This document shows, piece after piece, positions 8,713-27,514 of a stretch of DNA of 64,000 nucleotides. Location of the stretch: positions 373,332 through 437,331 of IMG/VR virus record IMGVR_UViG_3300037297_000066, one strand, 5' to 3'. Numbering within the stretch: the stretch's first letter is position 1; each line of letters opens with the position of its first letter. The position numbers and the translations under genes were made by a program. The notes under the pieces were generated by a model. The model did not search any database. It was not told the origin of the DNA and saw only the letters and a program-made list of their open reading frames with translations.

Positions 8713-8754
8713 ACTATCGTTTGACTCTACTAATGTAGAGCGGTTCTGCTGCTC

Positions 8755-8802
8755 AGATTCAGATGTAGACGTAGATCAAAAGCCCTAGATCCAGATTAAA
8801 AT
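8755..8802 (+). promoter_or_regulatory. 6-nt-periodic RAY array in the sheath gene leader
   Basis: GAT/GAC/AAT at 8756, 8762, 8768, 8774 and 8788, 8794, 8800. The same pattern recurs in four other leaders. Confidence 0.55.
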
Positions 8803-13264: not shown

Positions 13265-16200
13265 ATGGAGATGGACGCCTCTACCGATTACGACTTCCGT
13301 GTTCAGGCAGCTCAGGACGAGGACATCAGCGAGCTAGAGGCCGCTGAGTACATCGTTTTCAACTTGGCTCTGGATACCTATTTCCGGTACATCGAAGAGG
13401 TCACAGGGGAGGAGCCCCCAGAGGATGACGAGAATACTCTGGATGAGGCCCCCGAGGGTGACACCACGAAGTTGGATTCTCTGGCTTCGGATGGCATTCG
13501 ACTCTTGAAGCGAGTGGATAGCCGATTCCAAGAAGATGCGGTGTCCATGCTGGATACCAACCTGCCCTCTGAGACCCACAAGAAGATGCTTCAGAGGGCG
13601 TTTCGGCGCCCAGCCAGGTCAAGGGACGCTATCTCTCGTCGAGCTCTCTTGATGCGAACTGTGCTCTCCAGAGGAGGGCACAAGACCGTCAAAGCGGTCT
13701 TCCACAAAACTCGACCCCTTCGTGCTGTCAAAGATGCCTTGGCAGATGCCATGATGGAGGATGCAGGGCCGGCTTTGCAGAGATTTGCAGCGGTACCGAT
13801 TCGGAATCCTCGGATCAAGGCTTGGATCAAGGCAGCAGCTTCCGTTACCAGGGAAAGGGATCAGCCCAATGCTGCTCCTCTCAACCCCGTGGAGGTGGCC
13901 TCTTCGGTAGGTGCCGATCATGCGGAGGCACTTCGGAAGGACACTGTTGACGAAACAGGTCTCCAAGGGGCGGAAGAGCAAGCCGTTGCTGGGGATGAAA
14001 GGGAGAACAGGATTTCCGACATCGAGTCGGAGGCTGCCGAAGCTGCCGCTGAGGTTCTGGCTGATGCCGGTGAGCCCGATGAGGTTTTGACTCGTAGTGA
14101 GGTCATTGGCATTGCTACCGCTGCAGCGGTGGCAGCTTCTACCGACCCTACCGACCCTACCAACATCCCAGAGCCTCTTAAGCGTCTAGATGACGAGCAG
14201 AGAGCAGCGGCCATGACTGACGGCAAGGTCTTGGTGGCGGCAGGGGCCGGGTCTGGAAAGAGCTGGACTTTGGTGGCCCGGGTCGAGCATCTCATCAAGG
14301 ATCGAGGCGTCAATCCTGCCAGGTGTCTAGTCACTTCCTTCAACAAGAAGGCCGCTCTAGAGCTCGACTACAAGATCGGCAATGTCATTGGTGGGGACAT
14401 GGCTGACGCTATGTCTATTGGGACCCTTCACGGGTTGTTCCGGCAGTTCATCGACAAGTATGGGACTCAGGAAGAGCGTATCGCTGTGGGGGTTGATAGG
14501 AAAGGTCCCAACGGGTTCGTGAAGGGAGGCGATTCTGTTGCTTCGGCTGTCAACCGGGTGTGGCGCAAGTGCTATGCCACCCAGAAGGCTGATGGGACGT
14601 GGAAGGATGCTGACGCTCCTAGGGTCAAGGATGGAATGCGTGCCAAGACCCAGTGGGCTGGAAACAACGTGACTCCTGCCCAGGCCATAGAGAAAGCGGC
14701 CACGCCAGAAGAGGCTCAGCTGGCTCAGTGGTATGAGTGGTACATGGGTTTCAAAGGGGACCTGGGGAAGGATTGGGAACCCCCTTGTGGTCGAAAGCTC
14801 AGGGAGTGGGAAGGGTTCCTAGCAAAGAAGCGTCTTGGGGGAAGGATTCGTCTTGGAGACTTCGACGACATGTTGGGTATCTTCAAAGACATCCTCAAGA
14901 GACAACCGGAAGTGAAGGCCACTGTCCAGGCGGCCTTCGACCACATTTTGGTTGACGAGTGTCAGGATCTTAATGAGACCCAGAATGAAATTATCATGAT
15001 GATGTCCGAACACATCACTGATGGTTCTGATGGAAAGTCTCTTTGGATGGTGGGCGACGATAAGCAGTGCGTGGGTGTAGACACGCCTGTCCAGGTTTCA
15101 GCAACCGAGACTGTGCCCGCGGGGGAGCTTCAAGCGGGTGCCACTGTGTTGGCTTACCGCAATGGCAAATTGCGTCCCCAGAAGGTGTTGCACGCCAAAC
15201 ATTCCGATTGGCGCACTGGGTACAAGGTCACTACGGAAAGCGGTAAGACGCTTACTATGTCTCCCAACCACAAGATTTGGGCACAAGGTCCCGTTCTTGA
15301 GGAAAGGCAAGTAGCCGTCTACCTTATGTATCGTCAGGACAAGGGCTTCCGGGTTGGGATCACCAACAAGTGCCACGACGAGGATTACTACAACTCGTTT
15401 GGGGGTCGAGCCTTCATGGAGAAGGCCGAGCGTATGTGGGTTCTTACCGTATGCCAAGACCGTGAAGAAGCCTTGTTGAAGGAGGCTTCCTACTCTTTGG
15501 AATACGGTGTGCCTACGGCAGTGTTCGAGGGGGCCAGCAGGGGTATCAACCAGGATCGGTTGGATGCCTTGTTTGAGACTTTTGGACATAACGGTAGGAA
15601 ACTGCTGGCTGAAAAGACTCTGGGTTTTGACCTTCCCCACTGGGTTAGCCAATCTTACACGAAGCATGGGCGTCTCCGTAGAACCGTGCAGATGACGGCT
15701 CATGGATCAAAGGGAAGCCAGGTTGCTTTGGAGTGGTCTGGGGATGACCTGGACGGGAAGTTGGAAGGCATCCAGTTCTCCAAGCAAGCTAATGGGCGTC
15801 GCCGTCTCCGCAAATGGTTCACCAATTATCGAGAGGCTCTTGAGTTCGCTGAGCAGGTGGCAGAAAGGACTGGAGCTGCGTTGTCTCGGCGTTTGTCTAC
15901 TCCTGAAGGGCCTGTGCGGTTGCTCACTGCTTCTGGGTTGTTCTCTGGAATGCAAGTGGTTGTTAGGGACGATGAGGATCCCGAAGCCGTTGCTTTGGAA
16001 ACCATCGTGTCGGTGGAACCCGTTTCCGAGACGGCCTTCGTGGATCTGGACGTGGAAGATGCTTCCAACTTCGTCGGAGGCGGTATTCTTTCCCACAACA
16101 GTATCTACGCCTTCCGTGGAGCTCGTCCTGATCTGTTCACCGCCCTGGATGGTAAGGAAGGCTGGAAGACCCGATCCATTCGAACCAACTACCGCTGCCC

Positions 16201-17683
16201 CCCTGAGATTGTCGAGGCCGCCAACCTTCTCATTGCGAACAACGAGGACCAGATCCCCATGGAGGCCACCCCCAATCCAGCTCGGATTCGAGGGATGGCA
16301 AGCATGCGGGTAGAGCAGATGCAGGACTGTGAAGGTACGGCTATCTTGGCAGCCAACACCATCAAATCCGCTCTTGATGGGGACAGTTGCGAGATCTCTG
16401 ACAATGCGGTCCTGTGCCGTACCAATGCCGAATTGAACATGTTCGAGACGGCGTTGCTGCTTCGAGGCATCCCGTACGCTCGCAAAGGAGCCAGCAGCTT
16501 CCTTGGGTCTCCAGAAACGGCGGCCTTCTTGGGCTACATCAAGATGGTTTCAGGGGGCACTGACTTTGAGGGGCAGCAGAAGGCTCTTCGATCTATTCTC
16601 AACACGCCGAATCGGTTCTTCGTAGCCCCTGATGCAGCCAAAGCTGCTGTAGACCAGGCGCTTAGAGAGTACGCTTCAATGGAAAGGATGCCTATCAAGA
16701 ACGTGGACCCGATGGAAGCCTTGGGTGATGATCGGTTCCGGCGTTCTTTGGCACATGCCTTGACCAAGATTGACCGTCCTCGTAGCCGGCGAGAAGAGTT
16801 CAAGCTGAGCAAGACGGTCGAGAAGTTAGATGCTTTCTGGGAAGAGGTAGCGGATTTGAGAGAGACCGCTCAAGCCGAGGAGACCACAACTCACCAATTG
16901 TTCGACGCCGTTCTCAGTGTCTCAGGAATCGAGTTGGAGGTGGATCCTAACACGGGAAGGATCACGGGAGAGAAGCCGGTTACTTTCCGAGAAGCCGTTT
17001 CCAACAACTTGAAGGACCAGGGTGGGGAGGACGATGACGCAGGGGCTGAGGATGAAGACAGCTCCATGCAAGGGTTGGGGAACATTTCCTTCCTCTACGA
17101 GCTGGCCAAGCCTGATCCGAATGACCCTGCAGACAAGGCAGCCGATCCTCGAACTCCCTTTGGATTCCGAGCCAAGATGGAACGAATCAAGGAGCGGGCA
17201 AAGGAGCTTCGCTACGACATCACGGCTTGGGACAAGCAACAAGAGGCCAAGCCTCCTGAAGAGCGACAGCCGCCTCCTGGGGTGTACCTTGGGACCGTGC
17301 ACTCCACGAAAGGTGCACAGTGGAAGAACACCTTTGTTCAGATGCCCGCTGGCAAGTTCCCTTTCCAGCCGCCTGCCAAGCCTGGGTCTGAGCCGCCTCC
17401 CCCAGAGGTGATCGAGAAGGAGATGCAGCAGGAGCGAAGGCTGGGCTATGTGGCGATCACTCGGGCTATCGACAACCTGACCATTCTCTGTCCAAACGAG
17501 GTCAACGGGAAGCCTGCAGGGGTTAGTCCTTTCGTAGCCGAAGCGGGGCTACACCTTGGGGAAAACATCGGAGCAGAGCCCACCTCTCCTGAAGAAGAGC
17601 CTCCTGGAGAGCCTTCAAAGGAGGCTTCCGATGATTCGGGTTCGGATTGGGATGGTTACGAAGCTGACTACGAGAGGTCCTAG
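13265..17683 (+). CDS. uvrD: UvrD/PcrA/Rep-type SF1A helicase with an intein and a ~300-aa acidic N-terminal extension
   Basis: 'LDDEQ', Walker A 'AGAGSGKS', 'SFNKKAA', 'GTLHG', 'DFDDML', 'LVDECQDLN', split motif III 'VGDDKQ|SIYAFRGA', 'TNYRC', 'VLCRTN', 'TVHSTKG', 'QERRLGYVAITRA'. Confidence 0.93.
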   Translation: MEMDASTDYDFRVQAAQDEDISELEAAEYIVFNLALDTYFRYIEEVTGEEPPEDDENTLDEAPEGDTTKLDSLASDGIRLLKRVDSRFQEDAVSMLDTNLPSETHKKMLQRAFRRPARSRDAISRRALLMRTVLSRGGHKTVKAVFHKTRPLRAVKDALADAMMEDAGPALQRFAAVPIRNPRIKAWIKAAASVTRERDQPNAAPLNPVEVASSVGADHAEALRKDTVDETGLQGAEEQAVAGDERENRISDIESEAAEAAAEVLADAGEPDEVLTRSEVIGIATAAAVAASTDPTDPTNIPEPLKRLDDEQRAAAMTDGKVLVAAGAGSGKSWTLVARVEHLIKDRGVNPARCLVTSFNKKAALELDYKIGNVIGGDMADAMSIGTLHGLFRQFIDKYGTQEERIAVGVDRKGPNGFVKGGDSVASAVNRVWRKCYATQKADGTWKDADAPRVKDGMRAKTQWAGNNVTPAQAIEKAATPEEAQLAQWYEWYMGFKGDLGKDWEPPCGRKLREWEGFLAKKRLGGRIRLGDFDDMLGIFKDILKRQPEVKATVQAAFDHILVDECQDLNETQNEIIMMMSEHITDGSDGKSLWMVGDDKQCVGVDTPVQVSATETVPAGELQAGATVLAYRNGKLRPQKVLHAKHSDWRTGYKVTTESGKTLTMSPNHKIWAQGPVLEERQVAVYLMYRQDKGFRVGITNKCHDEDYYNSFGGRAFMEKAERMWVLTVCQDREEALLKEASYSLEYGVPTAVFEGASRGINQDRLDALFETFGHNGRKLLAEKTLGFDLPHWVSQSYTKHGRLRRTVQMTAHGSKGSQVALEWSGDDLDGKLEGIQFSKQANGRRRLRKWFTNYREALEFAEQVAERTGAALSRRLSTPEGPVRLLTASGLFSGMQVVVRDDEDPEAVALETIVSVEPVSETAFVDLDVEDASNFVGGGILSHNSIYAFRGARPDLFTALDGKEGWKTRSIRTNYRCPPEIVEAANLLIANNEDQIPMEATPNPARIRGMASMRVEQMQDCEGTAILAANTIKSALDGDSCEISDNAVLCRTNAELNMFETALLLRGIPYARKGASSFLGSPETAAFLGYIKMVSGGTDFEGQQKALRSILNTPNRFFVAPDAAKAAVDQALREYASMERMPIKNVDPMEALGDDRFRRSLAHALTKIDRPRSRREEFKLSKTVEKLDAFWEEVADLRETAQAEETTTHQLFDAVLSVSGIELEVDPNTGRITGEKPVTFREAVSNNLKDQGGEDDDAGAEDEDSSMQGLGNISFLYELAKPDPNDPADKAADPRTPFGFRAKMERIKERAKELRYDITAWDKQQEAKPPEERQPPPGVYLGTVHSTKGAQWKNTFVQMPAGKFPFQPPAKPGSEPPPPEVIEKEMQQERRLGYVAITRAIDNLTILCPNEVNGKPAGVSPFVAEAGLHLGENIGAEPTSPEEEPPGEPSKEASDDSGSDWDGYEADYERS
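15068..16099 (+). mobile_element. Intein (344 aa) in helicase motif III with a central endonuclease-like domain
   Basis: Begins Cys (CVGVDTPV). Block B 'TLTMSPNHKIW'. Blocks F/G 'FVDLDVEDASNFVGGGILSHN' followed by extein Ser. Removal restores GDDKQSIYAFRGA. Confidence 0.93.
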
Positions 17684-17685
17684 AC

Positions 17686-18630
17686 ATGGCTGCTCAGTAC
17701 ACTGAGATCACGTTGGAGGATATGGATCGCTTTTTTAAGCGAGCCTATCGAGCTTTGCGACCACGTCGAGACCTTGATCGTGGGGAGTATGTCTACACTC
17801 TCAAGCTCAGTAAGAACGTAGGTATTCGGGTCTACTCATCCATCACAAAGGAAGGAACGGGAGCTGGGGTAGGCAGTGATGCCATTCGAGTTGTCTTGTA
17901 CGGGACTCGGGTTCGAAGACCTTTGGTCAAGGGGAAGGCGCCCATCGTCAAGCGCACCCAGGGATGGAGGAACAGCCTTCAGAAGCAGATTGAACAGGCC
18001 ATCGAGACCTACGACGAGAAGGAAAGCTACTGGGAGGAACGAGCTGGGGGTCCGAGTCCTGAGGAGCGTGAAGAGTCTCGTCAGAAAGAAGGCAAGCCCA
18101 CGCTTCGGATCGAGCCTCGACTGAAGGTCAAGCCTCTGATCCTAGCCATCCTGGAAGAGGTTGGGGGGCCTGATGACGCCATCAGTGTGTTCACAGACAG
18201 CGAGAACGTGAACACAGTGGTTGTTCTTGCCAAAGAAAGCGCTTCCCCTTCGGAGTTGATTCACTCCTTGAGCAAAGCGTTCGTGGCGAAAGGTATCAAG
18301 CCTAAGCAAACCAGGGGGAAAGTGGTTTTGCTAGACTACGATGACGTGGCTGGTTCAGACACGGCCCCGGCTCCGAAGTTGCCTCCCACAGACAAGCAGA
18401 TTCGGTTCGCTCTCAAGCTGCTCAAGAAGGTCAGCGACGACAACTGGTACGACCATAGCTGGAACCAGAAGTACAAGATCCCTACGGTTCCCGACGAAGA
18501 ACAACTGCGTGGGATGGAGCGGCGCCAGGTCAGTGCTCTCATTGACGACTTGCTGAAGAACGGGTTCGGCTACTACAGAAACGCTTCTACTTTGGATTTG
18601 GAATACCCTGAATACGACCAGTTGATGTAG
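17686..18630 (+). CDS. Hypothetical multi-domain phage protein
   Basis: 314 aa. N-domain 'IRVYSSI..GSDAIRV..VKRTQGWRNSL'. C-terminal 'PTDKQIRF..QVSALIDDL' small helical module. Confidence 0.7.
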   Translation: MAAQYTEITLEDMDRFFKRAYRALRPRRDLDRGEYVYTLKLSKNVGIRVYSSITKEGTGAGVGSDAIRVVLYGTRVRRPLVKGKAPIVKRTQGWRNSLQKQIEQAIETYDEKESYWEERAGGPSPEEREESRQKEGKPTLRIEPRLKVKPLILAILEEVGGPDDAISVFTDSENVNTVVVLAKESASPSELIHSLSKAFVAKGIKPKQTRGKVVLLDYDDVAGSDTAPAPKLPPTDKQIRFALKLLKKVSDDNWYDHSWNQKYKIPTVPDEEQLRGMERRQVSALIDDLLKNGFGYYRNASTLDLEYPEYDQLM

Positions 18631-18639
18631 ACTGAGGGT

Positions 18640-19467
18640 ATGCCGGACCTAGAGCTGCAGGTCGTCGTAAACGAAGATCTTCCGTACGAGTTGGAGTCCG
18701 GGGTCGCTTTTGGGGACTTCGAGGTTCGTGAAGGGGTTGTTTACGACGGGGGCCCTGAAAGCCTGCTTCAGCTTTACCGGAATCTCCTGGTGGGGAGAGC
18801 TCACGGCCTAACTCTCTACACTCGGAAGATCCCTTGGGTGTCGAGTCTGGTTGCCATCGCCTTGTTCTTGAGGAGGGACCTGGCAGTGCATCCCAAGATG
18901 GCACAGTTTGTGATGTCGGCCGACCTGGCTAGCACCTACGGAGCGGCTGGGTTAGCCCATGTGGAGCCCGACGTGTGTTCCTTCTTGAGACTCCTGAGGG
19001 ACTACGTGGTGGACCAAAAGCTCGGAAAACCAGAGTTGGGCCGGAGACTTCATCAAGCGGTCGAGTGGATCGGGGAGTACATTTTGGAGGACCGTCTTCC
19101 GAACCTTCGGCCTGACCCAGAACCTCCTCAGGTATTGGATGTGGGCACAGATGGGTTCGTAACGGCGCTGTCTTCCAGGCCGGAAATCACCCAAGATGAT
19201 TGGATCCCTCTCTATCGGCAAGGTTTCTTGCGTGGGGTACTCTTCACTCCTCCCGAGAATGACTTCAGAGGGTACCTAGCTTCCCGCAAGAGCTCTTGGC
19301 TGACCTTCGACCTGCCCAAGGCCGCTGTTTGGCTAAACGAGGCTGAGAAGGCTCTGAGGGGCCTGGCCGGTCCGCTTTGGGAAGCGGATGGGGATTGGCT
19401 TTGGGGCCCGGAGCCTGGGACACTCCTTCCTCCTTCCTCCGTTTTGGATGTTCTGACCAGGGTCTAG
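18640..19467 (+). CDS. Hypothetical protein (possibly a degenerate DHH-like fold)
   Basis: 275-aa ORF with GAGGG upstream. Only a loose resemblance to DHH-type proteins; no catalytic DHH motif. Confidence 0.6.
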   Translation: MPDLELQVVVNEDLPYELESGVAFGDFEVREGVVYDGGPESLLQLYRNLLVGRAHGLTLYTRKIPWVSSLVAIALFLRRDLAVHPKMAQFVMSADLASTYGAAGLAHVEPDVCSFLRLLRDYVVDQKLGKPELGRRLHQAVEWIGEYILEDRLPNLRPDPEPPQVLDVGTDGFVTALSSRPEITQDDWIPLYRQGFLRGVLFTPPENDFRGYLASRKSSWLTFDLPKAAVWLNEAEKALRGLAGPLWEADGDWLWGPEPGTLLPPSSVLDVLTRV

Positions 19468-19500
19468 CGATAGAGTTTTCGTGCCCATGTCTCTGTAGGC

Positions 19501-20547
19501 ATGCCTGCACGAGTTTTAGTCACCCTCGGAACGGATGGGATCACCAACTGGGTTCAGGCCCCGAACGGTCGAAAACTGAGTTTGGGGACCATTGCTCCTG
19601 TCAAGTTCGTAGTGGAATTGGCTTCCAACGCTAGGGCGGCTCGGCAGGCTCTGGATGGCTTTGTTCGGGATGGGGAGGGGATGCTGAGTGTGGATCTTCA
19701 GGGGATGTTGGATTTGCTCACACCTAGACGCACTCGATGGGCCACGGATGCTTTTATTCCCTCTGATCTACAACAGATGGAGAAGTCTAGCCTGGACCTA
19801 CAGTGGGTCGATTTGTTCCTCTCAAAGGCAGAGGGACAGGTGCAGAAGTTGTCTTCGGAACCCGGAGACCCTTCTGAACTGGAGACCCTCAACAAGTCTG
19901 TCCAGGCTCTTTGCCATCCAGAGCAGGTTTCCTTTGAGGGAAGGCTGACTGCCATCGAAGCGTGTCTTGAGAAGGTTCCTTTGTCGGAGGAGAGGGTAGC
20001 TACCTTGAGATATTTGGTAGCGAGTCTTCAAACTCCTAAGGCCGCCGTTGAGTTGGCCGAAAGCATTCTAGCTGAGGTTCGAGAGACGAATGCTCGGATT
20101 GATTCCCTGGTCGAGCAAGGAAAGCGTTTCAGTTCGGTCAAAGCCAAAACTGAACTGGCCAAGGTGGTCAATGCTGTGGCCGGCATTGCTACTCATGATG
20201 TGACGGTTCCAGAAGTTCGAGAGGAGCTGAATGCAACGGCCTGTCGAGCAGACGAGTTGCACCGTCTCTTTTTCAGCAAGAGTGCAGCTCTTCGTCCGGG
20301 AGCAGCCACTCAACTTGAGTCAGCTCTCAACAAACTCCTCCGAAAGTTCCGTGGTGTGAAGGTGTCCTTGGATTTTCGTACCCGAGGCAAGAAGCAGGAG
20401 CCTTACATCACAGTTGCTATGCCGAGCCGAGATTGGTTTGAGAACACCTTGGCTCGTGACTTGGACGCTTTGGGGGACTTCAATTCTCTAGTTGGCTCCT
20501 ATGGGGCTGAGTACAAGCTGACCGGACAAGAGATCATCATCCAATGA
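19501..20547 (+). CDS. Hypothetical, largely helical protein
   Basis: 348-aa ORF filling the space before the tube gene. Confidence 0.7.
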   Translation: MPARVLVTLGTDGITNWVQAPNGRKLSLGTIAPVKFVVELASNARAARQALDGFVRDGEGMLSVDLQGMLDLLTPRRTRWATDAFIPSDLQQMEKSSLDLQWVDLFLSKAEGQVQKLSSEPGDPSELETLNKSVQALCHPEQVSFEGRLTAIEACLEKVPLSEERVATLRYLVASLQTPKAAVELAESILAEVRETNARIDSLVEQGKRFSSVKAKTELAKVVNAVAGIATHDVTVPEVREELNATACRADELHRLFFSKSAALRPGAATQLESALNKLLRKFRGVKVSLDFRTRGKKQEPYITVAMPSRDWFENTLARDLDALGDFNSLVGSYGAEYKLTGQEIIIQ

Positions 20548-20576
20548 GGATTTGAACCCGCCAGGGAGGACCTACC

Positions 20577-21299
20577 GTGCCTACTGCAACCAATTCCAAC
20601 AGCAACGCAAACTACATCTACCGGATGGGCACGAGCCCCAACACCCGAGCGGCCGTTTCACAAAAAAACAAGGTCTACGGGTACATGGAGGGAGCCCAAC
20701 GGTTTCAGCAGATCGGTGTTCTTTCTGAGTTCGGGCATGATGAGTCTCGGGCCATCGAGCCTATCCGTGGGGTAGGTTATGGTGATCAGGTTGCCGAGCT
20801 CATTCCGGGTGTAACGGAGCCAATGACCTTGACGGTCAACAAGACTCTGCTGTACGCCGTGAACATCTTCCAGGCACTCGGCTACAAGGGTGGGGTTCGA
20901 GGGCTGGTTCGAAGCCTCAAGCACCACCGGTGGCCGTTCGACATCCGTCAAGAACTGGTTTTCAGTGAGATCGCTTCGGCTTGGGATACCTCTGAGTATC
21001 AAGAGAAAGCTTTGACTCAGGCAGGGGCTGTTCCGACACCTGCGTCTGTGATCAAGGCTCTGTTCACCTTCTACGAGGGTTGCTGGATGAACAGCTACTC
21101 GGCTTCCTACACATCGGATGCCTCGATCGTAGCGGAGAACTCCAGCGTCACCGTGACCGACGTTCTTGATGGCAAGAGCACCTATGGTGAGTACATCGAC
21201 AGCGGTCTGGCTCCAGTGTCTGAGAATGGTTCGGCAGGTGTTGGCTACTCCATCCGGTTCTCTGGAGGAGGCGCCGCGACACCGGCTCCTGCCGTCTAG
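20577..21299 (+). CDS. Tail tube protein
   Basis: 'IGVLSEFGHDESRAIEPIRGVG..AELIPG..TLTVNKTLLY..PFDI..YEGCWMNSYSASY..IVAENSSV' follows the myovirus tube strand pattern. GGGAGG upstream. Precedes the chaperones and tape measure. Confidence 0.8.
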   Translation: MPTATNSNSNANYIYRMGTSPNTRAAVSQKNKVYGYMEGAQRFQQIGVLSEFGHDESRAIEPIRGVGYGDQVAELIPGVTEPMTLTVNKTLLYAVNIFQALGYKGGVRGLVRSLKHHRWPFDIRQELVFSEIASAWDTSEYQEKALTQAGAVPTPASVIKALFTFYEGCWMNSYSASYTSDASIVAENSSVTVTDVLDGKSTYGEYIDSGLAPVSENGSAGVGYSIRFSGGGAATPAPAV

Positions 21300-21306
21300 T
21301 ACGGTT

Positions 21307-21410
21307 GGACGACGATGAAGATGAGAATGCAGCAAGTACAATTGCGCCCTAGGCAGATGTAGACTTCCGCCTTCATCGCCGTCCTCAGATAAAGAAGAGG
21401 ATGAGGATGG
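21307..21410 (+). promoter_or_regulatory. Structured leader with RAY arrays and two alternative hairpins over the chaperone start
   Basis: 21307-21320 pairs with 21371-21384 (13/14). Alternatively 21373-21386 pairs with 21397-21410. Confidence 0.55.
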
Positions 21411-22549
21411 CAACACTCAAGGCGACAAAGCTCCAAGCAGCTATACGCAAGGCAAAGAAGGTTGGTCTGGTTGAGGAGTTCGTAACCATTACGGGCTGCC
21501 CGATAACGCTGACCAACCTTCAGCCTGAGCAGTTTGAGCAGATCGTAGATGAATGCGAAGAACTGGAGGATGTGGCCTACTACCACGCCTACCAGATCGG
21601 GCACATTTCTCGCAGTCTGGTTGAGGTCAACGGGATCGACCTAAGAGATGTTGACTTCGTAGAAGTTGAGGTCCAAGAGCCTGATGATTCGGGGCAGTTG
21701 GTACCCAAGACGGTCCAGATCGAGCGTCACGAATGGGTCAAGAAAGAGATCCTTTCGACATGGGGGAGAGAAGCCCTTGCTATAGCTTGGCGCAAGTTCA
21801 TGGATGTCCTCCACAAGGCCGAGTTAGCGTCTAAGGAGGGGGTTACTTTCGACCTGGCGCAAGAAACTCCAGAGGAGAAGTATCGCCGTCTGTTGGACGA
21901 GGCCAGGGAAATTGAGGAGAACCTGCCTCCGGATCTGGTTCCACGCATTCTGGAGGAGAAAGGCTACCTGCTCAAGGCTTCTAAAGAGGAGTTGGAAGCC
22001 GCTGGAGAGAGGATAGATCGCCTAGCTCAGGAGCAAGAGGAGAGCTCCCCTTCTTCGGAACCTCCACCACCCTCTCCTGAGCCTCCAGTACCCCCTCCAG
22101 TACCCCCTCCAGTGGCTTTGGCGTCTCCTACTCAGGGTTCCCCTCAGGAGGTTCCAAAACAGCCTCTAGACGCTCCTGAGGGCCCTAGTCAGGACGTTAA
22201 GCAGAGAATGTCTAGTCGGACTCCTTTGAATCGCCAAGGAGTGCAGGCTCCGATACCGGTTCAGAGGCGTGTGGTTTCGGCTCAACAGTCAGTTCCGGTG
22301 CCCCCCAATATTGCAGCCGCTGCTATGAGTGCGTCGGACAAGGCGGAGATAGAGAGGAAGGCGTTAGAGGAGTTGGACCCTAGTTTAGCTCAGGCAGATC
22401 CTTCTCAGTCTGCCAAACGACCTTCTGCGGGGGAGATTGCGGAACTTCGAAAACAAGGGACTTTGGATGCTCGGGCTCTCGTAGGCATCACGGACACCCC
22501 TCCTCCTGCTGGGATAAACCCTAGGTACCGAAAGCCGCCTGGACTGTGA
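21401..22549 (+). CDS. Putative tail assembly chaperone with Pro-rich C-terminal half (start may be ATG 21407)
   Basis: Between tube and tape measure. Contains 'VTITGCPITLTNL..ISRSLVEVNGIDL'. Confidence 0.6.
   Translation: MRMATLKATKLQAAIRKAKKVGLVEEFVTITGCPITLTNLQPEQFEQIVDECEELEDVAYYHAYQIGHISRSLVEVNGIDLRDVDFVEVEVQEPDDSGQLVPKTVQIERHEWVKKEILSTWGREALAIAWRKFMDVLHKAELASKEGVTFDLAQETPEEKYRRLLDEAREIEENLPPDLVPRILEEKGYLLKASKEELEAAGERIDRLAQEQEESSPSSEPPPPSPEPPVPPPVPPPVALASPTQGSPQEVPKQPLDAPEGPSQDVKQRMSSRTPLNRQGVQAPIPVQRRVVSAQQSVPVPPNIAAAAMSASDKAEIERKALEELDPSLAQADPSQSAKRPSAGEIAELRKQGTLDARALVGITDTPPPAGINPRYRKPPGL
22082..22113 (+). repeat. 12-nt tandem repeat CCTCCAGTACCC (~2.7 copies) encoding PPVP
   Basis: cctccagtaccc-cctccagtaccc-cctccagt read directly from the sequence. 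Confidence 0.8.
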
Positions 22550-22553
22550 TCGT

Positions 22554-23810
22554 ATGAGCTACGAGGAAGACCAGGCCAAACTCAAGCGAGAGTTGGAAGG
22601 GGCGCCCGAGGATCCGGATGACGCTTCTTTCATTCCTCCAGAGCCTGAGGTTAACCCGGAAGTATACAAGGATGTGGAGCCCTTGCTTTTTCGAGGGTTT
22701 CTATACCAAGCAGCAGAGATCAATGGGGTCCCTTTCGTTTTCAAGTCTCTCAACCAGCATGAGTTCGATGCTTTGAATTTAGGGGGAGTTCCCTCTGGTA
22801 ACCACAAGCTGGTTCAGAGGTACTACGACCGGTTTCTTTCTTACGGGGTCTTCAAGATCGATGACCAGAATGTGCTGGTAGATCGGGAAGAGAGTCTGCC
22901 TGAACTGGTTGACTTCTTTAAGAGCCTTTCGGGCGAGGCCAAGCAAAAGGTAGTGCGTTACCTGAGTGAATTGAATCGTAGGGCCAGTCGAGCTGTCTTG
23001 TTGTCTGAGGTCTTTGCTATGGAAAGCACCTCCAGGCATCGATGGTCTCAGTATCAGGGGATGGATCTAACTTCTCCAGCCGTCACGGGGATTCGAGGCA
23101 CTGAGTACCTGGGACTCAACTGGGGACAGTTGGCTTGGCGGGCGTTCAACTACTTCGAGGACATGAAGGTCCAAATGGAGGTGGACTGGGAAAACACGAA
23201 ATTCGTAGCCAGCTCAATGGCCGGGAAGGGCATGAACAAGATTCACTCCCAGGATAAGACTCGGCGCAAGAGCGAAATGATGGAGAGGCGCGAACGAAAG
23301 GACAAGATCCTTCGTTTGGCCGTCTTAGGTGAGCCATTTGAGGATAGCAAGAAGGATAGCGCTCAACTCAAGGTAGCTCGAACGGTCGAAGAGTTGACGG
23401 ACCAATTGGAAAGAGATCTTAAGGGTGAGAAAGACTGGCACGACATGGTGATTGCTGACCATGAACGGCGACTCAAAGAAGAGTACGAGGCCAAGTCCCA
23501 ACGTCTGAAGGATCTGGCAGCTGCTCATCTGGCTGAGTATGGGGAGAGCCGACTAGCAGGCTCTACGGATCGTCAAGGGTTGTCTAAGGCCCAAGTGGAA
23601 GAACGTGTTCAGCGACGACGTCAACTCATGGCTCAGCGATTGGCTCAGGGAATCGTCTACCCGGAGCTTCAAGACCCTAAGATGGCCAACCACATTGAGA
23701 AGTGGCAGAGCGCTGTTCCTCTGATTAGGACCAGTCGGGATCCGAGCACTGCTACTCCTGCTGTTACCCGTTCTCGTCCTGTGTCTCAGCCCTTCAACCT
23801 TAAGAGGTAG
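22554..23810 (+). CDS. Second putative tail assembly chaperone
   Basis: Immediately upstream of the tape measure. 'AEINGVPFVFKSLNQHEF..LSYGVFKIDDQNV' parallels the N-domain of the 21401 protein. Confidence 0.55.
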   Translation: MSYEEDQAKLKRELEGAPEDPDDASFIPPEPEVNPEVYKDVEPLLFRGFLYQAAEINGVPFVFKSLNQHEFDALNLGGVPSGNHKLVQRYYDRFLSYGVFKIDDQNVLVDREESLPELVDFFKSLSGEAKQKVVRYLSELNRRASRAVLLSEVFAMESTSRHRWSQYQGMDLTSPAVTGIRGTEYLGLNWGQLAWRAFNYFEDMKVQMEVDWENTKFVASSMAGKGMNKIHSQDKTRRKSEMMERRERKDKILRLAVLGEPFEDSKKDSAQLKVARTVEELTDQLERDLKGEKDWHDMVIADHERRLKEEYEAKSQRLKDLAAAHLAEYGESRLAGSTDRQGLSKAQVEERVQRRRQLMAQRLAQGIVYPELQDPKMANHIEKWQSAVPLIRTSRDPSTATPAVTRSRPVSQPFNLKR

Positions 23811-23812
23811 TT

Positions 23813-26800
23813 GTGCCTACTCCTGAAGAAGTCCTGACTATTGGGTTGGACCTGGATATTACAGGGGCTCTCAAGGATCTGGCAGCCTTTCAACGGAAGA
23901 TGTCTGCTCAGATGGGGGCGGTGACGGATACCGTAGACAAGCTGAGCAAGGCCAACGAAAGGATGGCTAAGAAGGCTGCCAAAGGGACCAGAGAGTGGGA
24001 AGAGTCCGTCGAAGATCTAGAAGAGTCAGTGGACAAGCTGGAGAAGGTACTGGCGAATCTGGAGCGTCGAGCCAAGAAGGCTAGTGGAGAAGAGAAAAGA
24101 CGTCTTGAGCAAGAGATCGCTACTCTTCGACGGGTAGCAGAAGAGAAAAAGAAGGGAGAGAAGAAGGAGAAGGGAAAGAGAGGGGTAGGGGAGGCTGAAG
24201 CAGCTGCGAAAGGTGCTGTAGCTGGAGCTCTTGCTGGCTTGGCTGGTAGAGAGGCTAAGGACATTGGGAGGGATATCTTTGGAGGTATGAGAGGGGGCAT
24301 GCAGTCCTTGTTCCAGAAGGACCTAAAGGGCTCTATCGCTGGAGGGGGAAAGCTTCTTAGCGGCATCATGGAGGGAACCTTCAAGGTTGGTGGTGGGCTC
24401 TTCAAGCGAGGTGGGAAAGTATTTGGAGACCAGGCCGGAAGTTTCCTGATGCGCAAGTCTCAGCAGCAGATGGCTAAGGGAGGGATGAAGGGCAAGATGG
24501 CGGGGGGTGGCCTGGCGGGCGTAGGAGCCGCCTTGAAGGGATTGGGGGGCATGTTCAAGGCAGTGGGTCCCCTTCTCAACACTCTTAGCAAGATCGGACC
24601 CTTGGTGGGAATGCTGTCTTCAGCCTTAATGGGGGTAGTTCAGCTTCTCATAGATCTAGATTCTAGGGCCAAAGACTTCAATCGATCTATCCTCCAGACG
24701 GCAGGCAATGCTGAGTTTCTGGCCAACAACTTCTACGATTCGGAGTTGGCTGCCGGGGATATGGAAGATACCCTGAAAGGGGTGAGAGACGCTGCCTACA
24801 GTCTCAAGAACATTGACTGGGGGATCACTGCGGACGAGCACAAGGCGGTCTACAACACTCTCAACCAAGAGGGTGTAGCCTTTGCTGATGTCTCCAAGTG
24901 GGCTAAAGCTTCCAAGAGATCGGTTGAGGACTTTTCGTTCGAGTTGGTGAAAGTGAGCGTGGGGATTTCTAGGAATCTCGGCGTACCTCTTCAAGAGATC
25001 AACCAAATGCAGGCCGAGATGATAACGGAGCTAGGTTCTAGTTTGGATGAGACCAAGCTGGCCTTTGCTCAAATGACTCGGGCAGCTACAGAGTCGGGGA
25101 TTGCTGGCAACAAGTTTTTCGCCATGATTCGGGGTGTGAGTCAGGACTTGGCTCTGTACAACACTCGAATGGGATCGGCTTCGAAGCTTCTCAAGGAAGT
25201 GGGTAAAGCCATGAATCCTCGGGCAGCTCAACAATTCATGCAGTTTGCCATGCAGGGGCTAAAGTCGATGGATCAGGACGCTCGTATGCGTCTCAATCTG
25301 CTGACCGGAGGCAAGGGCAAAGGCATCGTCACGAAGGATTTGGAACGTAAGGGCAAGCTTCTGGTTAGAGACATTCGAGAGTCTTTCGTTCAGGGTTCTG
25401 AGGCTCTAGCGGCTTCTTGGAGTGAGGACAAGATTCAGGAGGCTTTGTCCAAAGGAGGGATCGAACGGGCCCAGCTGCTTCGTGATGTAGGGAAGATGCG
25501 TGGCGGAGGTGCTCTGGTAGGGGCAGCTGAAGAGATGAAGATCGATAGGTCTGCCGTCAAGAAAGGGGAGTACGGGGTGGCGGCTGCTATGCGAAACCTT
25601 TCTGCAGGGGGCAGCTTGGAGATGATGAGGGCGGGCATCATGAAGTTCAGTGGGGCCAAATCTCTTTCTGAGGGCATCGGAAGCATCGGTCAGGACAAGA
25701 TGGCTCAGATGCTAGGCATCTCTGAAGAGCAGGTGCGGGGAATGGCCAAGCTGGAAGGCCACTTGATGCGACAGAGAGAGTTGCTCAAAGCAGACTTAGA
25801 GTCGTCAGATGAGAAGGTAAGAGAAGATGCCAAGCAGAGGCTTGAGGCAGCGGGGATAACCGAGGAGCAGCTCAAGAGCAACCAGGTGGGTATGGGTGCT
25901 CTTATGGAAACGCTGTCTGATAAGGATCGGAAGCAGGCTGAGGAAGACTCTGAAACTCAACTAGATGTATCGAAGCGGCAAGCAGACATGCAGACGAGCA
26001 TGCTTCAGAAGTTCGAGATACTCGTCAACTTCCTCATGAACCAGCTCTACAACGTACTCCTGGACATCTGGGAAGCCGTTGAATCTATCATGGATCCATT
26101 GGGTTCAGAGAAGGAGAAACGTAAGGCTAAGCGAGCTATTCTGGAGACCAAAGACCCTGAGATGATCAAGGCCATGCGAGACATGGGGGAGAATCTGGAT
26201 GCCTACGCTTTGAGAGGAAAGGCTTCAGATGTGTATGGCAAGGCTTTGACGGAGAAGGTTCAAACAGATGAGGGTCGAGCGCAGGTATTGAAGGTTGCCC
26301 AGGAGCAGTTGACTCACGAAGACATCATGGCTGCCGGAGCAATGGGAGGTGTCTCCAAGGCCAAGATGGATAAGCTGAGGTCCAAGCTGTACAAGAAGGT
26401 AACAGCAACAGAGGCAGGTATGGCTCCTGCTGTTTCTGTTGGGGGCCCAGGCACTATGGCCCCTGCAATGGCAATGGCAGGGGCTACCAAAGTTACGGTA
26501 CCTATCGAAGGGGTGGACTTTGGTCAGGCTATGCGAGATGCTGGTTTCAGTCCCGATGAGATTTCCCATCTCTTGGAAAAGGGAATCTGGGCTGCCGCTC
26601 CTTCTCGGGCAGTTTCTTTTGCTACCAGAGTAGGCAAGCCTGAGGCCAAGAAAGAAGCCAAGGTACAAGCTGAAGAGCAGGCCAAGGTCCAGCAGCCTTC
26701 CGCTCAGCAGCAGGCTTCGGCAAAGACGGCTGCCCCTCCAGGCCAACCTGCTGCGGCAGCGTCCGGCGTAGGTACTCTTGGCCAGGATGAGATGGCTCGT

Positions 26801-27514
26801 AGGTTAGGTGGGGGGATGAGAGGTTCTTTGGCTGCCGCTGTGGAGGCTGCCAGGGCGAAGATTCGACCCGGTGGGTCTGGGGGTACTCTGGAAGGCAAGG
26901 CTGAGGAGGTACCCGCTACGGCTAAGGGTCAAGGTCAGCTGCATGAAGACATGAGCCGGATGGAGAAACGTCTCTCTACAAAGGGCATCCGGTACGACAA
27001 GTCCTTCCTGACCGGAGACTATGGTTCTGAGATCGAGAAGAGAGTTCTCGATGCGATGCGTGTGGCCCTCGTGGAATTCGCTATCTACAAGGACGCTGAC
27101 AAGGAAGCCTTGGTTAGGTCTCTAGGAAAGGCTGATCCTAAGACCTTCGGAAAGGACCTTCTACAAGCAGCCCAGACAACCAAGAATCCTGCTGATTTCG
27201 CTAAATCTCTCACTACGGGAACTATGGGGGAGGGTACGCCTACACAGACCGGGGGGTATGTTGTGGGACGGAACCCGGATGGCACAGCCCGTGTTCTTCG
27301 TCCACCGGCGGGCGAGTCTCCGGCCTTCGTGGGTCCTGGGGAAAGCATCATGTCCCGAGGGGCGATGGCAGCCATGGCTGGAGGGGGTCGAGGTGGGTTG
27401 CCTCCTATTCAGGTCAGCGTCAATGGTGTAGGAGGTCGGGAACTAGCTCGGATCATCGAAGCCAAGGTGGCTGATGGTGTGTACGAGTACAAGCGCAGGG
27501 AAGGGTTCTCTTGA
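23813..27514 (+). CDS. Tape measure protein
   Basis: 1233 aa, A/G/K/M-rich and helical, with an N-terminal coiled coil and a Gly-rich hydrophobic segment. C-terminal 'IQVSVNG..LARIIEAKV'. Canonical position. Confidence 0.88.
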   Translation: MPTPEEVLTIGLDLDITGALKDLAAFQRKMSAQMGAVTDTVDKLSKANERMAKKAAKGTREWEESVEDLEESVDKLEKVLANLERRAKKASGEEKRRLEQEIATLRRVAEEKKKGEKKEKGKRGVGEAEAAAKGAVAGALAGLAGREAKDIGRDIFGGMRGGMQSLFQKDLKGSIAGGGKLLSGIMEGTFKVGGGLFKRGGKVFGDQAGSFLMRKSQQQMAKGGMKGKMAGGGLAGVGAALKGLGGMFKAVGPLLNTLSKIGPLVGMLSSALMGVVQLLIDLDSRAKDFNRSILQTAGNAEFLANNFYDSELAAGDMEDTLKGVRDAAYSLKNIDWGITADEHKAVYNTLNQEGVAFADVSKWAKASKRSVEDFSFELVKVSVGISRNLGVPLQEINQMQAEMITELGSSLDETKLAFAQMTRAATESGIAGNKFFAMIRGVSQDLALYNTRMGSASKLLKEVGKAMNPRAAQQFMQFAMQGLKSMDQDARMRLNLLTGGKGKGIVTKDLERKGKLLVRDIRESFVQGSEALAASWSEDKIQEALSKGGIERAQLLRDVGKMRGGGALVGAAEEMKIDRSAVKKGEYGVAAAMRNLSAGGSLEMMRAGIMKFSGAKSLSEGIGSIGQDKMAQMLGISEEQVRGMAKLEGHLMRQRELLKADLESSDEKVREDAKQRLEAAGITEEQLKSNQVGMGALMETLSDKDRKQAEEDSETQLDVSKRQADMQTSMLQKFEILVNFLMNQLYNVLLDIWEAVESIMDPLGSEKEKRKAKRAILETKDPEMIKAMRDMGENLDAYALRGKASDVYGKALTEKVQTDEGRAQVLKVAQEQLTHEDIMAAGAMGGVSKAKMDKLRSKLYKKVTATEAGMAPAVSVGGPGTMAPAMAMAGATKVTVPIEGVDFGQAMRDAGFSPDEISHLLEKGIWAAAPSRAVSFATRVGKPEAKKEAKVQAEEQAKVQQPSAQQQASAKTAAPPGQPAAAASGVGTLGQDEMARRLGGGMRGSLAAAVEAARAKIRPGGSGGTLEGKAEEVPATAKGQGQLHEDMSRMEKRLSTKGIRYDKSFLTGDYGSEIEKRVLDAMRVALVEFAIYKDADKEALVRSLGKADPKTFGKDLLQAAQTTKNPADFAKSLTTGTMGEGTPTQTGGYVVGRNPDGTARVLRPPAGESPAFVGPGESIMSRGAMAAMAGGGRGGLPPIQVSVNGVGGRELARIIEAKVADGVYEYKRREGFS

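What the first reader, a model, noticed from the sequence alone, without database searches (positions are those of the whole stretch)
21300..21410. Two mutually exclusive hairpins over the tail-chaperone start codon (switch-like leader)
Seen: segment 21371-21386 (CTTCATCGCCGTCCTC) can pair upstream with 21307-21320 (GGACGACGATGAAG, 13/14 pairs), which leaves the RBS free. It can instead pair downstream with 21397-21410 (GAGGATGAGGATGG: 7 bp, 2 mismatches, 5 bp including G-U), which buries the GAGG RBS and both ATGs (21401, 21407). Both competing partners are RAY arrays. Inference: a protein occupying the upstream array, or a ribosome terminating at the tube stop (21299), would flip the fold. 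This could set the tube:chaperone ratio without the usual frameshift.
Basis: partly seen in the sequence, partly recalled or inferred. Interest (0 to 1): 0.68.

Follow-up and report, generated by a model that had tools for sequence, protein, structure and literature searches.

The report
Switch-like leader before tail-chaperone gene
Between the tail-tube and tail-chaperone genes of a 437-kb jumbo phage lies a conserved folded mRNA leader: one pyrimidine strand can pair with either an upstream look-alike of the ribosome site or the real start region, and a tiny upstream reading frame runs between the arms, so it probably tunes how much chaperone is made.

Summary
The registers and the balance between them differ from what was proposed.

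**Window fold.** ViennaRNA predicts a perfect 10-bp hairpin (H2, 21378-87/21402-11, p about 0.9-0.99). It buries the conserved start ATG 21407 and leaves the GAGG at 21397-400 in its loop. H2 coexists with a 7-bp remnant of the long-range helix (H1, 21314-20/21371-77).

**Relatives.** In 18 of 19 distinct homologous leaders, and again in 16 new leaders from a later metagenome scan, H1 closes a variable 50-135 nt domain. H1 abuts or overlaps (0-7 nt) a hairpin over the chaperone SD or AUG. Arms match their own partner far better than other loci's arms (z=-7.0, and -6.7 in the new set). Compensatory changes occur, one reaching the chaperone's second codon.

**New feature.** In the window's subgroup a 13-24 codon upstream ORF (21315-21362) starts inside the 5' arm and stops 0-12 nt before the 3' arm. 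Six of nine new leaders show this (P about 2e-4).

**Verdict.** This is a real cis-regulatory leader with no Rfam match. A ribosome on the 5' arm raises the cost of opening the chaperone start by 4-6 kcal/mol. Actual switching, and what triggers it, remain inferred.

The parts
20577..21299 (+). Upstream gene, 240 aa: a virion structural protein in the tail-tube position. Its stop TAG is at 21297-99.
   Evidence: tblastn hits phage G gp180 and a Tunturi_5 'virion structural protein'. In phage G, gp180 lies between the sheath and the chaperone. The fold prediction failed (pLDDT 35), so 'tube' rests on position and homology only.
21307..21320 (+). H1 5' arm (GGACGACGAUGAAG). The inner 7 nt (21314-20) are paired in the predicted equilibrium fold. 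The outer part competes with H2.
   Evidence: Conserved with compensatory changes.
21315..21362 (+). Upstream ORF of 15 codons (MKMRMQQVQLRPRQM, then stop) with in-frame AUGs at 21315, 21321 and 21327. Its stop TAG 21360-62 ends 8 nt before the H1 3' arm.
   Evidence: The geometry was reproduced in 6 of 9 newly fetched leaders. No GGAGG-like SD lies upstream.
21354..21363 (+). Conserved motif CAGATGTAGA. It holds the uORF stop and belongs to the AGAU(G)-rich content of the H1 domain.
   Evidence: The only other exact copy in the window is at 8760-69, before the sheath gene.
21371..21384 (+). H1 3' arm (CUUCAUCGCCGUCC). Its 3' half (21378-84) is shared with H2.
21378..21387 (+). H2 5' strand (GCCGUCCUCA), the anti-start / anti-SD strand.
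   Evidence: Pair probabilities are 0.96-0.995. 94.8% of cells are paired and 5 pairs carry compensatory changes in 17 sequences.
21388..21401 (+). H2 loop of 14 nt. It contains the likely SD GAGG (21397-21400), 6 nt before ATG 21407.
   Evidence: Unpaired probability is 0.65-1.0.
21402..21411 (+). H2 3' strand (UGAGGAUGGC). It covers the second GAGG, the start codon AUG 21407-09 and the first two bases of codon 2.
   Evidence: Pair C21379-G21410 changes to U-A in L028, L158 and L154, which changes codon 2 from GCA to ACA/ACG.
21407..22549 (+). Tail assembly chaperone gene (380 aa from the conserved ATG). The N-terminal domain has a chaperone fold and the C-terminal half is proline-rich. It is a single ORF.
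   Evidence: Start codon. Homology. Fold. No frameshift signal.
21397..21410 (+).
   Evidence: The sequence is confirmed. This register has p about 7e-5 at equilibrium. Its first 7 bp are the MFE only at transcript lengths ending 21404-08.

Best explanation
The 107-nt spacer between the tube-like gene and the tail-assembly-chaperone (TAC) gene is a conserved, structured cis-regulatory mRNA leader built as a three-strand competition.

**Anatomy.** A pyrimidine-rich strand (21371-87) can pair downstream with the TAC start region. This is H2, which closes the AUG at 21407. The same strand can instead extend its pairing upstream with a purine-rich look-alike of that region just after the tube stop. 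This is H1, which closes a variable domain.

**Effect of the 5' arm.** When the 5' arm is available, opening H2 for a ribosome is partly paid for by H1 extending. When the 5' arm is occupied, H2 is harder to open.

**Likely occupant.** In the window's subgroup the natural occupant is a ribosome. A short upstream ORF starts inside the 5' arm and ends just before the 3' arm. In the window the tube stop also lies only 7 nt before the arm. Ribosome traffic over the leader would therefore depress TAC initiation. That would keep the chaperone scarce relative to the tube protein, in a family whose TAC has no G/GT-type frameshift.

**Shown versus inferred.** Shown: the structures, their conservation and covariation, the uORF geometry, and the computed energetics. 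Inferred: that the leader controls translation, the sign of the effect, and that ribosomes are the trigger.
For: **Window fold**
- H2 has p 0.9-0.99 together with a 7-bp H1.
- The 66-nt H2 region folds with z=-4.5 against shuffles.

**Family conservation**
- The H1+H2 architecture is present in 18 of 19 distinct leaders, at tube identity 56-100%.
- The H1 3' arm and H2 5' arm overlap by 3-7 nt in 13 of these leaders and abut (0-1 nt) in 5. They are never separated.

**Arm co-evolution**
- Pairing with the locus's own partner averages -29.2 kcal/mol. Permuted partners give -22.4+-1.0, and 0 of 20000 permutations do as well.
- H2 gives z=-3.0, and the coding control is null.
- The result is reproduced on 16 leaders fetched afterwards: H1 z=-6.7 and H2 z=-2.3.

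**Formal pair counts on 17 model-aligned sequences**
- 94.8% of cells are paired, against 26-58% when partners are slid.
- 5 pairs carry double changes, and 0 of 500 shuffles reach the observed value.
- The shared nucleotide C21379 co-varies with its H2 partner inside TAC codon 2.
- Conserved G-U pairs fit only the + strand RNA.

**Energetics**
- Blocking the 5' arm raises the RBS-opening cost in 18 of 18 loci.
- In the window that cost is 11.3 kcal/mol free, 15.4 with a ribosome at the tube stop and 17.3 with a ribosome on the uORF AUG.
- The difference between full H1 and full H2 lies within about 2 kcal/mol in several relatives.

**uORF**
- It spans the domain in 5 of 5 first-set subgroup members, at about 8% chance each.
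- It does so in 6 of 9 new leaders (binomial 2e-4).
- The peptides are not conserved beyond MK(M/I), and the stop codon type varies.

**Gene identity and missing frameshift:**
Against: - In the window itself H2 wins regardless, and full H1 has p<=0.002. There is no bistability at equilibrium.
- The TAC RBS-opening cost (10.3 kcal/mol) is only the 31st percentile of 297 genes in this genome, so strong repression is not demonstrated.
- Five first-set leaders have no H1/H2 overlap.
- The outer H1 pairs are invariant within the window's subgroup. They carry a conserved A/C mismatch and show no significant covariation there.
- The uORF has no recognisable SD, was noticed post hoc, and spans the domain only in one subgroup. 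Other subgroups have only 1-7 codon ORFs.
- The distance from tube stop to arm varies from 2 to 52 nt.
- There is no expression data and the host is unknown.
- All energies are nearest-neighbour predictions.
Confidence: 0.5

Rival explanations
1. The architecture is static and does not switch. H2 is a constitutive start-codon hairpin that simply lowers chaperone translation. H1 closes an independent domain, for example a stabiliser or processing site at the 3' end of the tube message. The two helices stack coaxially, and their overlap is incidental.
For: - In the window both helices coexist in the MFE and the centroid fold.
- Five relatives show no overlap between H1 and H2.
- Many relatives have GC-rich hairpins just after the tube stop, and distant relatives have classic terminators there.
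- The outer H1 pairs in the subgroup show no covariation.
Against: - Overlaps of 3-7 nt recur in at least 7 sequence-distinct lineages. In each, both partners are matched to the shared strand.
- Blocking the 5' arm changes the RBS-opening cost in every locus.
- The uORF geometry is tied to both arms.
- The net opening cost is not high, which argues against simple strong occlusion.
Confidence: 0.25
2. The leader is an operator run by a protein. A phage or host RNA-binding protein recognises the AGAU(G)/YAGAU repeats in the H1 domain. These repeats are shared with the sheath-gene leader. Binding shifts the H1/H2 balance, as Com does on Mu mom mRNA or coat protein does on the MS2 replicase operator (both from my own knowledge).
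For: - AGAT occurs 60 times against 8 expected, in 18 of 18 H1 domains. TAGAT occurs 26 times against 0.6 expected.
- The only other such cluster in the 437-kb genome lies just upstream of the tail sheath gene.
- Sheath leaders of relatives carry the same CCAGAU/CCAAAU arrays.
Against: - No candidate protein was identified.
- Part of the enrichment follows from the AUG-rich uORF start and from the need to mimic the GGAUG start region.
- The coding background under-represents TAG, which inflates some of the enrichment ratios.
- The repeats are few in the window's own leader.
Confidence: 0.12
3. The element acts at the DNA level. The repeats and the conserved CAGATGTAGA would be a promoter or regulator-binding array for tail genes, and the inverted repeat would be irrelevant to RNA.
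For: The exact 10-mer occurs twice in the window, both times in intergenic DNA before tail genes. The arrays are conserved before sheath genes.
Against: - The motif is not enriched in intergenic DNA across the genome.
- No sigma-70-like promoter was found.
- Arm covariation with strand-specific G-U pairs needs a + strand RNA that contains both arms.
Confidence: 0.08
4. It is a chance inverted repeat with no function.
For: About five comparable inverted repeats occur per 64 kb.
Against: Conservation and covariation appear in two independently fetched sets of relatives. A covariance model built on 7 sequences recovered 8 new members at E 1e-12 to 1e-17.
Confidence: 0.02

Closest known systems
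Leader-peptide translational attenuators (ermC, cat/cmlA type; from my own knowledge)
   Same: A short upstream ORF lies in the leader. Alternative helices share a strand, and one of them occludes the SD or AUG of the downstream gene. The position of a ribosome on the leader decides which helix forms.
   Different: - It has three strands rather than four, so ribosome occupancy is predicted to close the downstream start rather than open it.
- No stalling motif or inducer is evident.
- The uORF lacks a clear SD and its peptide is not conserved.
- The context is a phage tail module.
RNA-phage MS2/Qbeta long-range control (Min Jou interaction; the 5' UTR kinetic trap of the maturation gene; from my own knowledge)
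   Same: Long-range pairing with an upstream segment sets access to a downstream start. Ribosome passage or co-transcriptional folding determines the state. The purpose is to set the stoichiometry of virion proteins.
   Different: Here the upstream partner acts as an anti-sequestor rather than a sequestor. It lies in an intergenic leader with its own uORF, and the genome is dsDNA.
Lambda cIII mRNA alternative structures and the T4 gene e / soc / 49 RBS hairpins (from my own knowledge)
   Same: These are phage mRNAs in which two conformations, or two transcript forms, differ in whether the RBS is paired.
   Different: Those cases depend on RNase III or on alternative promoters. Here no promoter or processing site could be shown.
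Translational riboswitch expression platforms
   Same: A closing helix (P1-like H1) shares its 3' strand with an SD/start sequestor.
   Different: The enclosed domain varies from 50 to 135 nt and has no conserved core beyond short AGAUG-type motifs. There is no Rfam match.
G/GT programmed -1 frameshift of tail assembly chaperones (lambda; phage G gp181/182)
   Same: It concerns the same gene family and the same biological problem: a chaperone needed in small, fixed amounts relative to tail proteins.
   Different: This family encodes one 318-404 aa ORF. It has no overlapping frame and no conserved slippery heptamer. Any dosage control would act at initiation.

Membership tests
Any Rfam 15 family | Covariance-model match at or near the gathering score | tested here: not met
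   In the window (21200-21500, E<=10) the only hit is a chance mir-598 match at 15 bits on the minus strand. There are no gathering-level hits in 17 homologous loci.
Leader-peptide translational attenuator | A short ORF in the leader upstream of the regulated start | tested here: met
   15 codons at 21315-21362. The uORF spans the domain in 5 of 5 first-set and 6 of 9 later-fetched subgroup leaders. Other subgroups have only 1-7 codon ORFs.
Leader-peptide translational attenuator | Mutually exclusive helices, one of which occludes the SD or AUG | tested here: met
   H1 and H2 share 3-7 nt in 13 of 18 leaders, and H2 covers the SD and/or AUG in 18 of 18. In the window the exclusivity is partial, with 7 shared nucleotides.
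Leader-peptide translational attenuator | The leader ORF has its own ribosome-binding site | tested here: inconclusive
   No GGAGG-like element lies before AUG 21315, only purine-rich GGACGACG. Reinitiation from the tube stop 15 nt upstream is possible in the window but is not general.
Leader-peptide translational attenuator | A ribosome stalling signal or inducer | not testable with these tools
   The peptides are unconserved beyond MK(M/I), and there are no expression data.
Riboswitch | A conserved ligand-binding core enclosed by the closing helix | tested here: not met
   The domain varies from 50 to 135 nt and is unalignable between subgroups.
Intrinsic terminator / attenuator of transcription | A GC-rich hairpin followed by a U tract | tested here: not met
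   No terminator-like site lies in 20400-21700, and no U run follows H1 or H2.
Termination-reinitiation coupling | The stop of the upstream ORF overlaps or closely abuts the downstream start | tested here: not met
   The tube stop lies 107 nt before ATG 21407, and the uORF stop lies 44 nt before it.
Tail assembly chaperone with G/GT frameshift | Chaperone fold | tested here: met
   The model has pLDDT 78. BFVD hits are phage G gp181 (E 3e-6, TM 0.83 by target) and gp182, plus Rhodococcus phage Finch TAC. The top PDB hit is the HK97 chaperone 2ob9 (prob 0.99). Sequence-level support.
Tail assembly chaperone with G/GT frameshift | A slippery heptamer and an overlapping -1 frame extension | tested here: not met
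   No other + strand ORF of 50 aa or more lies inside 21401-22549. All 20 homologs have a single ORF. The window has no X XXY YYZ heptamer and none is conserved across the family.

The most novel reading that the evidence does not exclude
A clade of jumbo phages has replaced the near-universal G/GT frameshift of tail assembly chaperones with a ribosome-sensing RNA toggle. Ribosomes leaving the tube gene, or translating a domain-spanning uORF, strip an anti-sequestor helix and so lock the chaperone start codon. Chaperone synthesis then runs inversely to tube translation on the same message. The AGAU-repeat arrays shared with the sheath leader would tie this device into a wider, still unknown tail-gene regulon.
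Probability: 0.25. Interest if true: 0.78.

Novelty: new variant of a known kind. Interest (0 to 1): 0.62.

Why it matters
Tail assembly chaperones must be made in small, fixed amounts relative to tube and tape-measure proteins. The textbook solution is a programmed frameshift. This phage family lacks that signal. Instead it carries a conserved, covarying leader with a shared-strand competition and an upstream ORF.

If the leader does set chaperone dosage, it would be a second, initiation-level solution to the same stoichiometry problem. It would also be a new structured-RNA family from uncultivated jumbo phages.

The leader is compact, at about 110 nt, and directly testable with reporters and structure probing. 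The covariance model built here already recovers new members, so the family can be expanded and curated.

Tried and rejected
- **RNAalifold on MAFFT alignments** of whole leaders gave no consensus. The variable domain misaligns the arms, so I used cross-locus permutation tests and a covariance-model alignment instead.
- **Covariance model R1**, built from the window's subgroup, reaches only that subgroup and finds L007 and L009 weakly. No family-wide model was built.
- **Conserved AUG-stop mini-ORF.** I tested whether CAGAUGUAG marks a conserved 'start-stop'. I rejected it as the general rule, because UAC/UAU variants exist and L007, L011 and L020 lack the AUG.
- **Readthrough extension of the tube protein.** The uORF is in frame with the tube ORF in the window but in only 2 of 11 relatives, so I rejected this.
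- **General promoter motif.** The AGATGTAGA-type motif is not enriched in intergenic DNA genome-wide, and no sigma-70-like promoter or terminator was found.
- **Unusually closed RBS.** I rejected this on equilibrium grounds, because the opening cost is at the 31st percentile of genes.
- **Expression and strain variation.** No RNA runs hold the locus. A 99% identical strain has no differences inside the leader, which is uninformative.
- **PHROGs and Pfam** gave nothing for the seven neighbouring proteins.
- **The AlphaFold model of the tube-like protein** was unusable (pLDDT 35).
- **CsrA-like (GGA) and Hfq (ARN) site readings** of the repeats were considered from memory and not pursued. The enriched core is AGAU rather than GGA.

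Full report
**Context.** The window is the last 64 kb of a complete 437-kb virus record with direct terminal repeats. It is a jumbo phage known only from wetland and marine-sediment metagenomes. Genes in the window are almost all on the + strand.

ORF 20577-21299 (240 aa) is homologous to phage G gp180 and to a Tunturi_5 'virion structural protein'. In phage G, gp180 sits between the sheath and the frameshifted tail assembly chaperone gp181/182, which is followed by the tape measure.

The next ORF (21401/21407-22549) is a tail assembly chaperone (TAC):
- tblastn hits the annotated chaperone of Tunturi_5 (E 5e-5).
- blastp hits gp181 (E 2e-4).
- A pLDDT-78 model of its first 210 residues matches gp181 (E 3e-6, TM 0.83 by target), gp182 and other chaperones in BFVD.
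- Its top PDB hit is the HK97 chaperone (prob 0.99).

The tube assignment rests on homology and position only, because the fold prediction failed. The sheath gene is ORF 8833-13092.

**The observation.** The upstream inverted repeat is reported independently as 14 nt, 93% complementary, with 50 nt between the arms. Taken alone it is only moderately unusual, since about five comparable repeats occur per 64 kb.

**Thermodynamics in the window.**
A perfect 10-bp hairpin, H2 (21378-87 with 21402-11), dominates, with pair probabilities of 0.96-0.995.
- H2 buries the second GAGG and AUG 21407. It leaves the GAGG at 21397-400 in a 14-nt loop.
- A 7-bp remnant of the long-range helix H1 (21314-20 with 21371-77, p about 0.77) coexists with H2 and abuts it.
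- Enforcing the full 14-bp H1 costs 3.6-5.4 kcal/mol (p 2e-4 to 2e-3).
- For growing transcripts, full H1 is the MFE up to nucleotide 21400. H2 takes over from 21412.
- The estimated refolding barrier from full H1 to H2 is about 11 kcal/mol. This is a findpath upper bound.

**Start codon.** In homologs the protein alignment begins at the position of ATG 21407, and many loci have only that ATG. The real start is therefore 21407 (MATLK...), with GAGG 21397-400 at a 6-nt spacing as the likely SD.

**Comparative evidence.** A scan of viral contigs with the tube protein gave 19 distinct leaders in which the tube gene is followed by the TAC gene.
- In 18 of the 19, the same architecture recurs with different sequences. 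A long-range helix closes a variable 50-135 nt domain. It is directly followed by a hairpin whose 5' strand is an anti-SD/anti-start sequence and whose 3' strand covers the SD and/or AUG.
- H1 cores include GACGACGAUGAAG/CUUCAUCGCCGUC, CGACGAAG/CUUCGUCG, GAUGACAGCG/CGCUGUCAUC, GGAUGGCGG/CCGCCAUCC, GACGGCUUGG/CCAAGCCGU and GGCGCGUGC/GCACGCGCC.
- The H1 3' arm and H2 5' arm overlap by 3-7 nt in 13 leaders and abut in 5. They are never apart.

An unsupervised test used raw regions, with no hand-picked arms. The region after the tube stop pairs with its own -50..-18 region at a mean of -29.2 kcal/mol. Permuted partners give -22.4+-1.0 (z=-7.0, 0 of 20000). H2 gives z=-3.0. A coding-region control is null.

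A later metagenome scan supplied 19 new unique leaders. The 16 long enough for the test reproduced the result: H1 z=-6.7, H2 z=-2.3 and a null control.

A covariance model built on 7 sequences of the window's subgroup recovered 8 of the new leaders at E 1e-12 to 1e-17. On that 17-sequence alignment:
- 94.8% of cells pair, against 26-58% for slid partners.
- 5 pairs carry double changes.
- 0 of 500 shuffles reach the observed value on four of the five measures.

The shared nucleotide C21379 is mismatched in H1. It changes to U in three leaders together with its H2 partner, G to A. That alters TAC codon 2 from GCA to ACA/ACG. Conserved G-U pairs would be A/C mismatches on the other strand, so the structure belongs to the + strand RNA. 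There is no Rfam match.

**Competition.**
- The energy difference between full H1 and full H2 ranges from -3.8 to +10 kcal/mol and lies within about 2 kcal/mol in several relatives. The window's closest relative, L006, favours H1.
- Blocking the 5' arm raises the cost of opening the TAC RBS in all 18 loci, by 1.3-10 kcal/mol.
- Two cautions apply. Within the window's subgroup the outer H1 pairs are almost invariant and carry a conserved A/C mismatch, so covariation there is not significant. The window's net RBS-opening cost (10.3 kcal/mol) is only the 31st percentile of 297 genes in the genome.
- What is unusual is the conserved architecture, not the strength of occlusion.

**An upstream ORF.**
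- The H1 domain is strongly enriched in AGAU(G): AGAT occurs 60 times against 8 expected and is present in 18 of 18 domains.
- In the window, AUG 21315 lies inside the 5' arm, with two more in-frame AUGs at 21321 and 21327. It opens a 15-codon ORF that ends at TAG 21360-62, 8 nt before the 3' arm.
- In all five first-set members of the subgroup, an ORF of 15-20 codons starts at the same arm AUG and stops 4-8 nt before the 3' arm. This holds despite unalignable interiors, indels and different stop codons. Chance is about 8% per locus.
- I noticed this post hoc, so I tested it on the leaders fetched afterwards. Six of nine had the stop 0-12 nt before the arm, against a null of 0.12 (binomial 2e-4). 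Some of these loci are related to one another.
- The peptides are conserved only at MK(M/I). No SD precedes the uORF. The uORF is not consistently in frame with the tube gene.
- Other subgroups carry only 1-7 codon ORFs at the arm.

Modelled ribosome footprints in the window give these costs for opening the TAC RBS:

| Ribosome position | Cost (kcal/mol) |
|---|---|
| None | 11.3 |
| Terminating at the tube stop | 15.4 |
| Initiating on the uORF AUG | 17.3 |
| Mid-uORF | 12.3 |
| Terminating the uORF | 11.8 |

**Interpretation.** The best reading is a cis-acting translational leader in which the 5' arm acts as an anti-sequestor. Ribosome traffic over that arm makes the chaperone start harder to open. 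The traffic could come from the uORF or, where the tube stop is close, from tube termination. This would keep the chaperone scarce. It fits a family whose TAC is a single 318-404 aa ORF without an overlapping frame or a slippery heptamer.

The structure, its conservation and the geometry are shown. The regulatory role, its sign and its trigger are inferred. It cannot be the general mechanism, because the distance from stop to arm is 2-52 nt, often with a GC hairpin in between.

The rival readings are set out separately: static stacked helices, a protein that binds the AGAU repeats, and a DNA-level element. The protein rival draws on one observation. The only other AGAU-type cluster in the genome precedes the sheath gene, and it is conserved in relatives.

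**Limits.** There are no RNA data. Strain variation is uninformative. The host is unknown. All energies are nearest-neighbour predictions. I found no prior description of such a leader. Comparisons with ermC, MS2, lambda cIII, T4 gene e and Mu mom rest on my own knowledge.

Noticed in passing
window 8735-8800 (upstream of sheath gene 8833-13092); L086-L145: This is the only dense YAGAT cluster in the 437-kb genome. It includes a second exact CAGATGTAGA and lies just before the tail sheath gene. Sheath leaders of about 45 relatives carry similar CCAGAU/CCAAAU/CCAGAC arrays. The array may be a shared tail-gene signal, and its nature is unknown.
   Followed up: partly
L011, L018, L020, L149, L152, L153, L158 (H2 loop, about -25 to -3 before the TAC ATG): Many relatives have a 4-codon mini-ORF (AUG AAG AGG AGA UGA, 'MKRR') starting in the H2 loop. 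Its UGA lies 2 nt before the TAC AUG. The window has AUA instead of AUG at that place.
   Followed up: no
window 21407-22549 and homologs: The chaperone is a single long ORF with a chaperone fold in about the first 145 residues. Its C-terminal half is proline-rich and low in complexity. No short 'G' form is apparent.
   Followed up: partly
window 21291-21305: A 5-bp hairpin (GCCGU/ACGGU) presents the tube stop codon UAG in its loop. It is specific to the window. Relatives instead have GC-rich hairpins after the stop, and distant relatives have classic terminators.
   Followed up: partly
window 13265-17683: A 1472-aa UvrD-type helicase is interrupted by an intein-like insertion (Pfam Intein_splicing, below the cut-off, at residues 617-945).
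   Followed up: no
window 17686-27514: Seven consecutive structural-module proteins have no PHROGs hit and no significant Pfam hit. ORF 23813-27514 (1233 aa) shows a GC-skew peak of 0.28 in 24001-26000 and may be the tape measure.
   Followed up: no
L019 3699-4364: One relative has a 664-nt spacer between the tube and chaperone genes. This suggests an insertion, and its leader was not analysed.
   Followed up: no
L017 3723-3831: This is the one distinct leader of the first set without a recognisable H1. It still has an 18-codon MKT... uORF ending in a CAGAUGA motif 17 nt before the TAC AUG.
   Followed up: no
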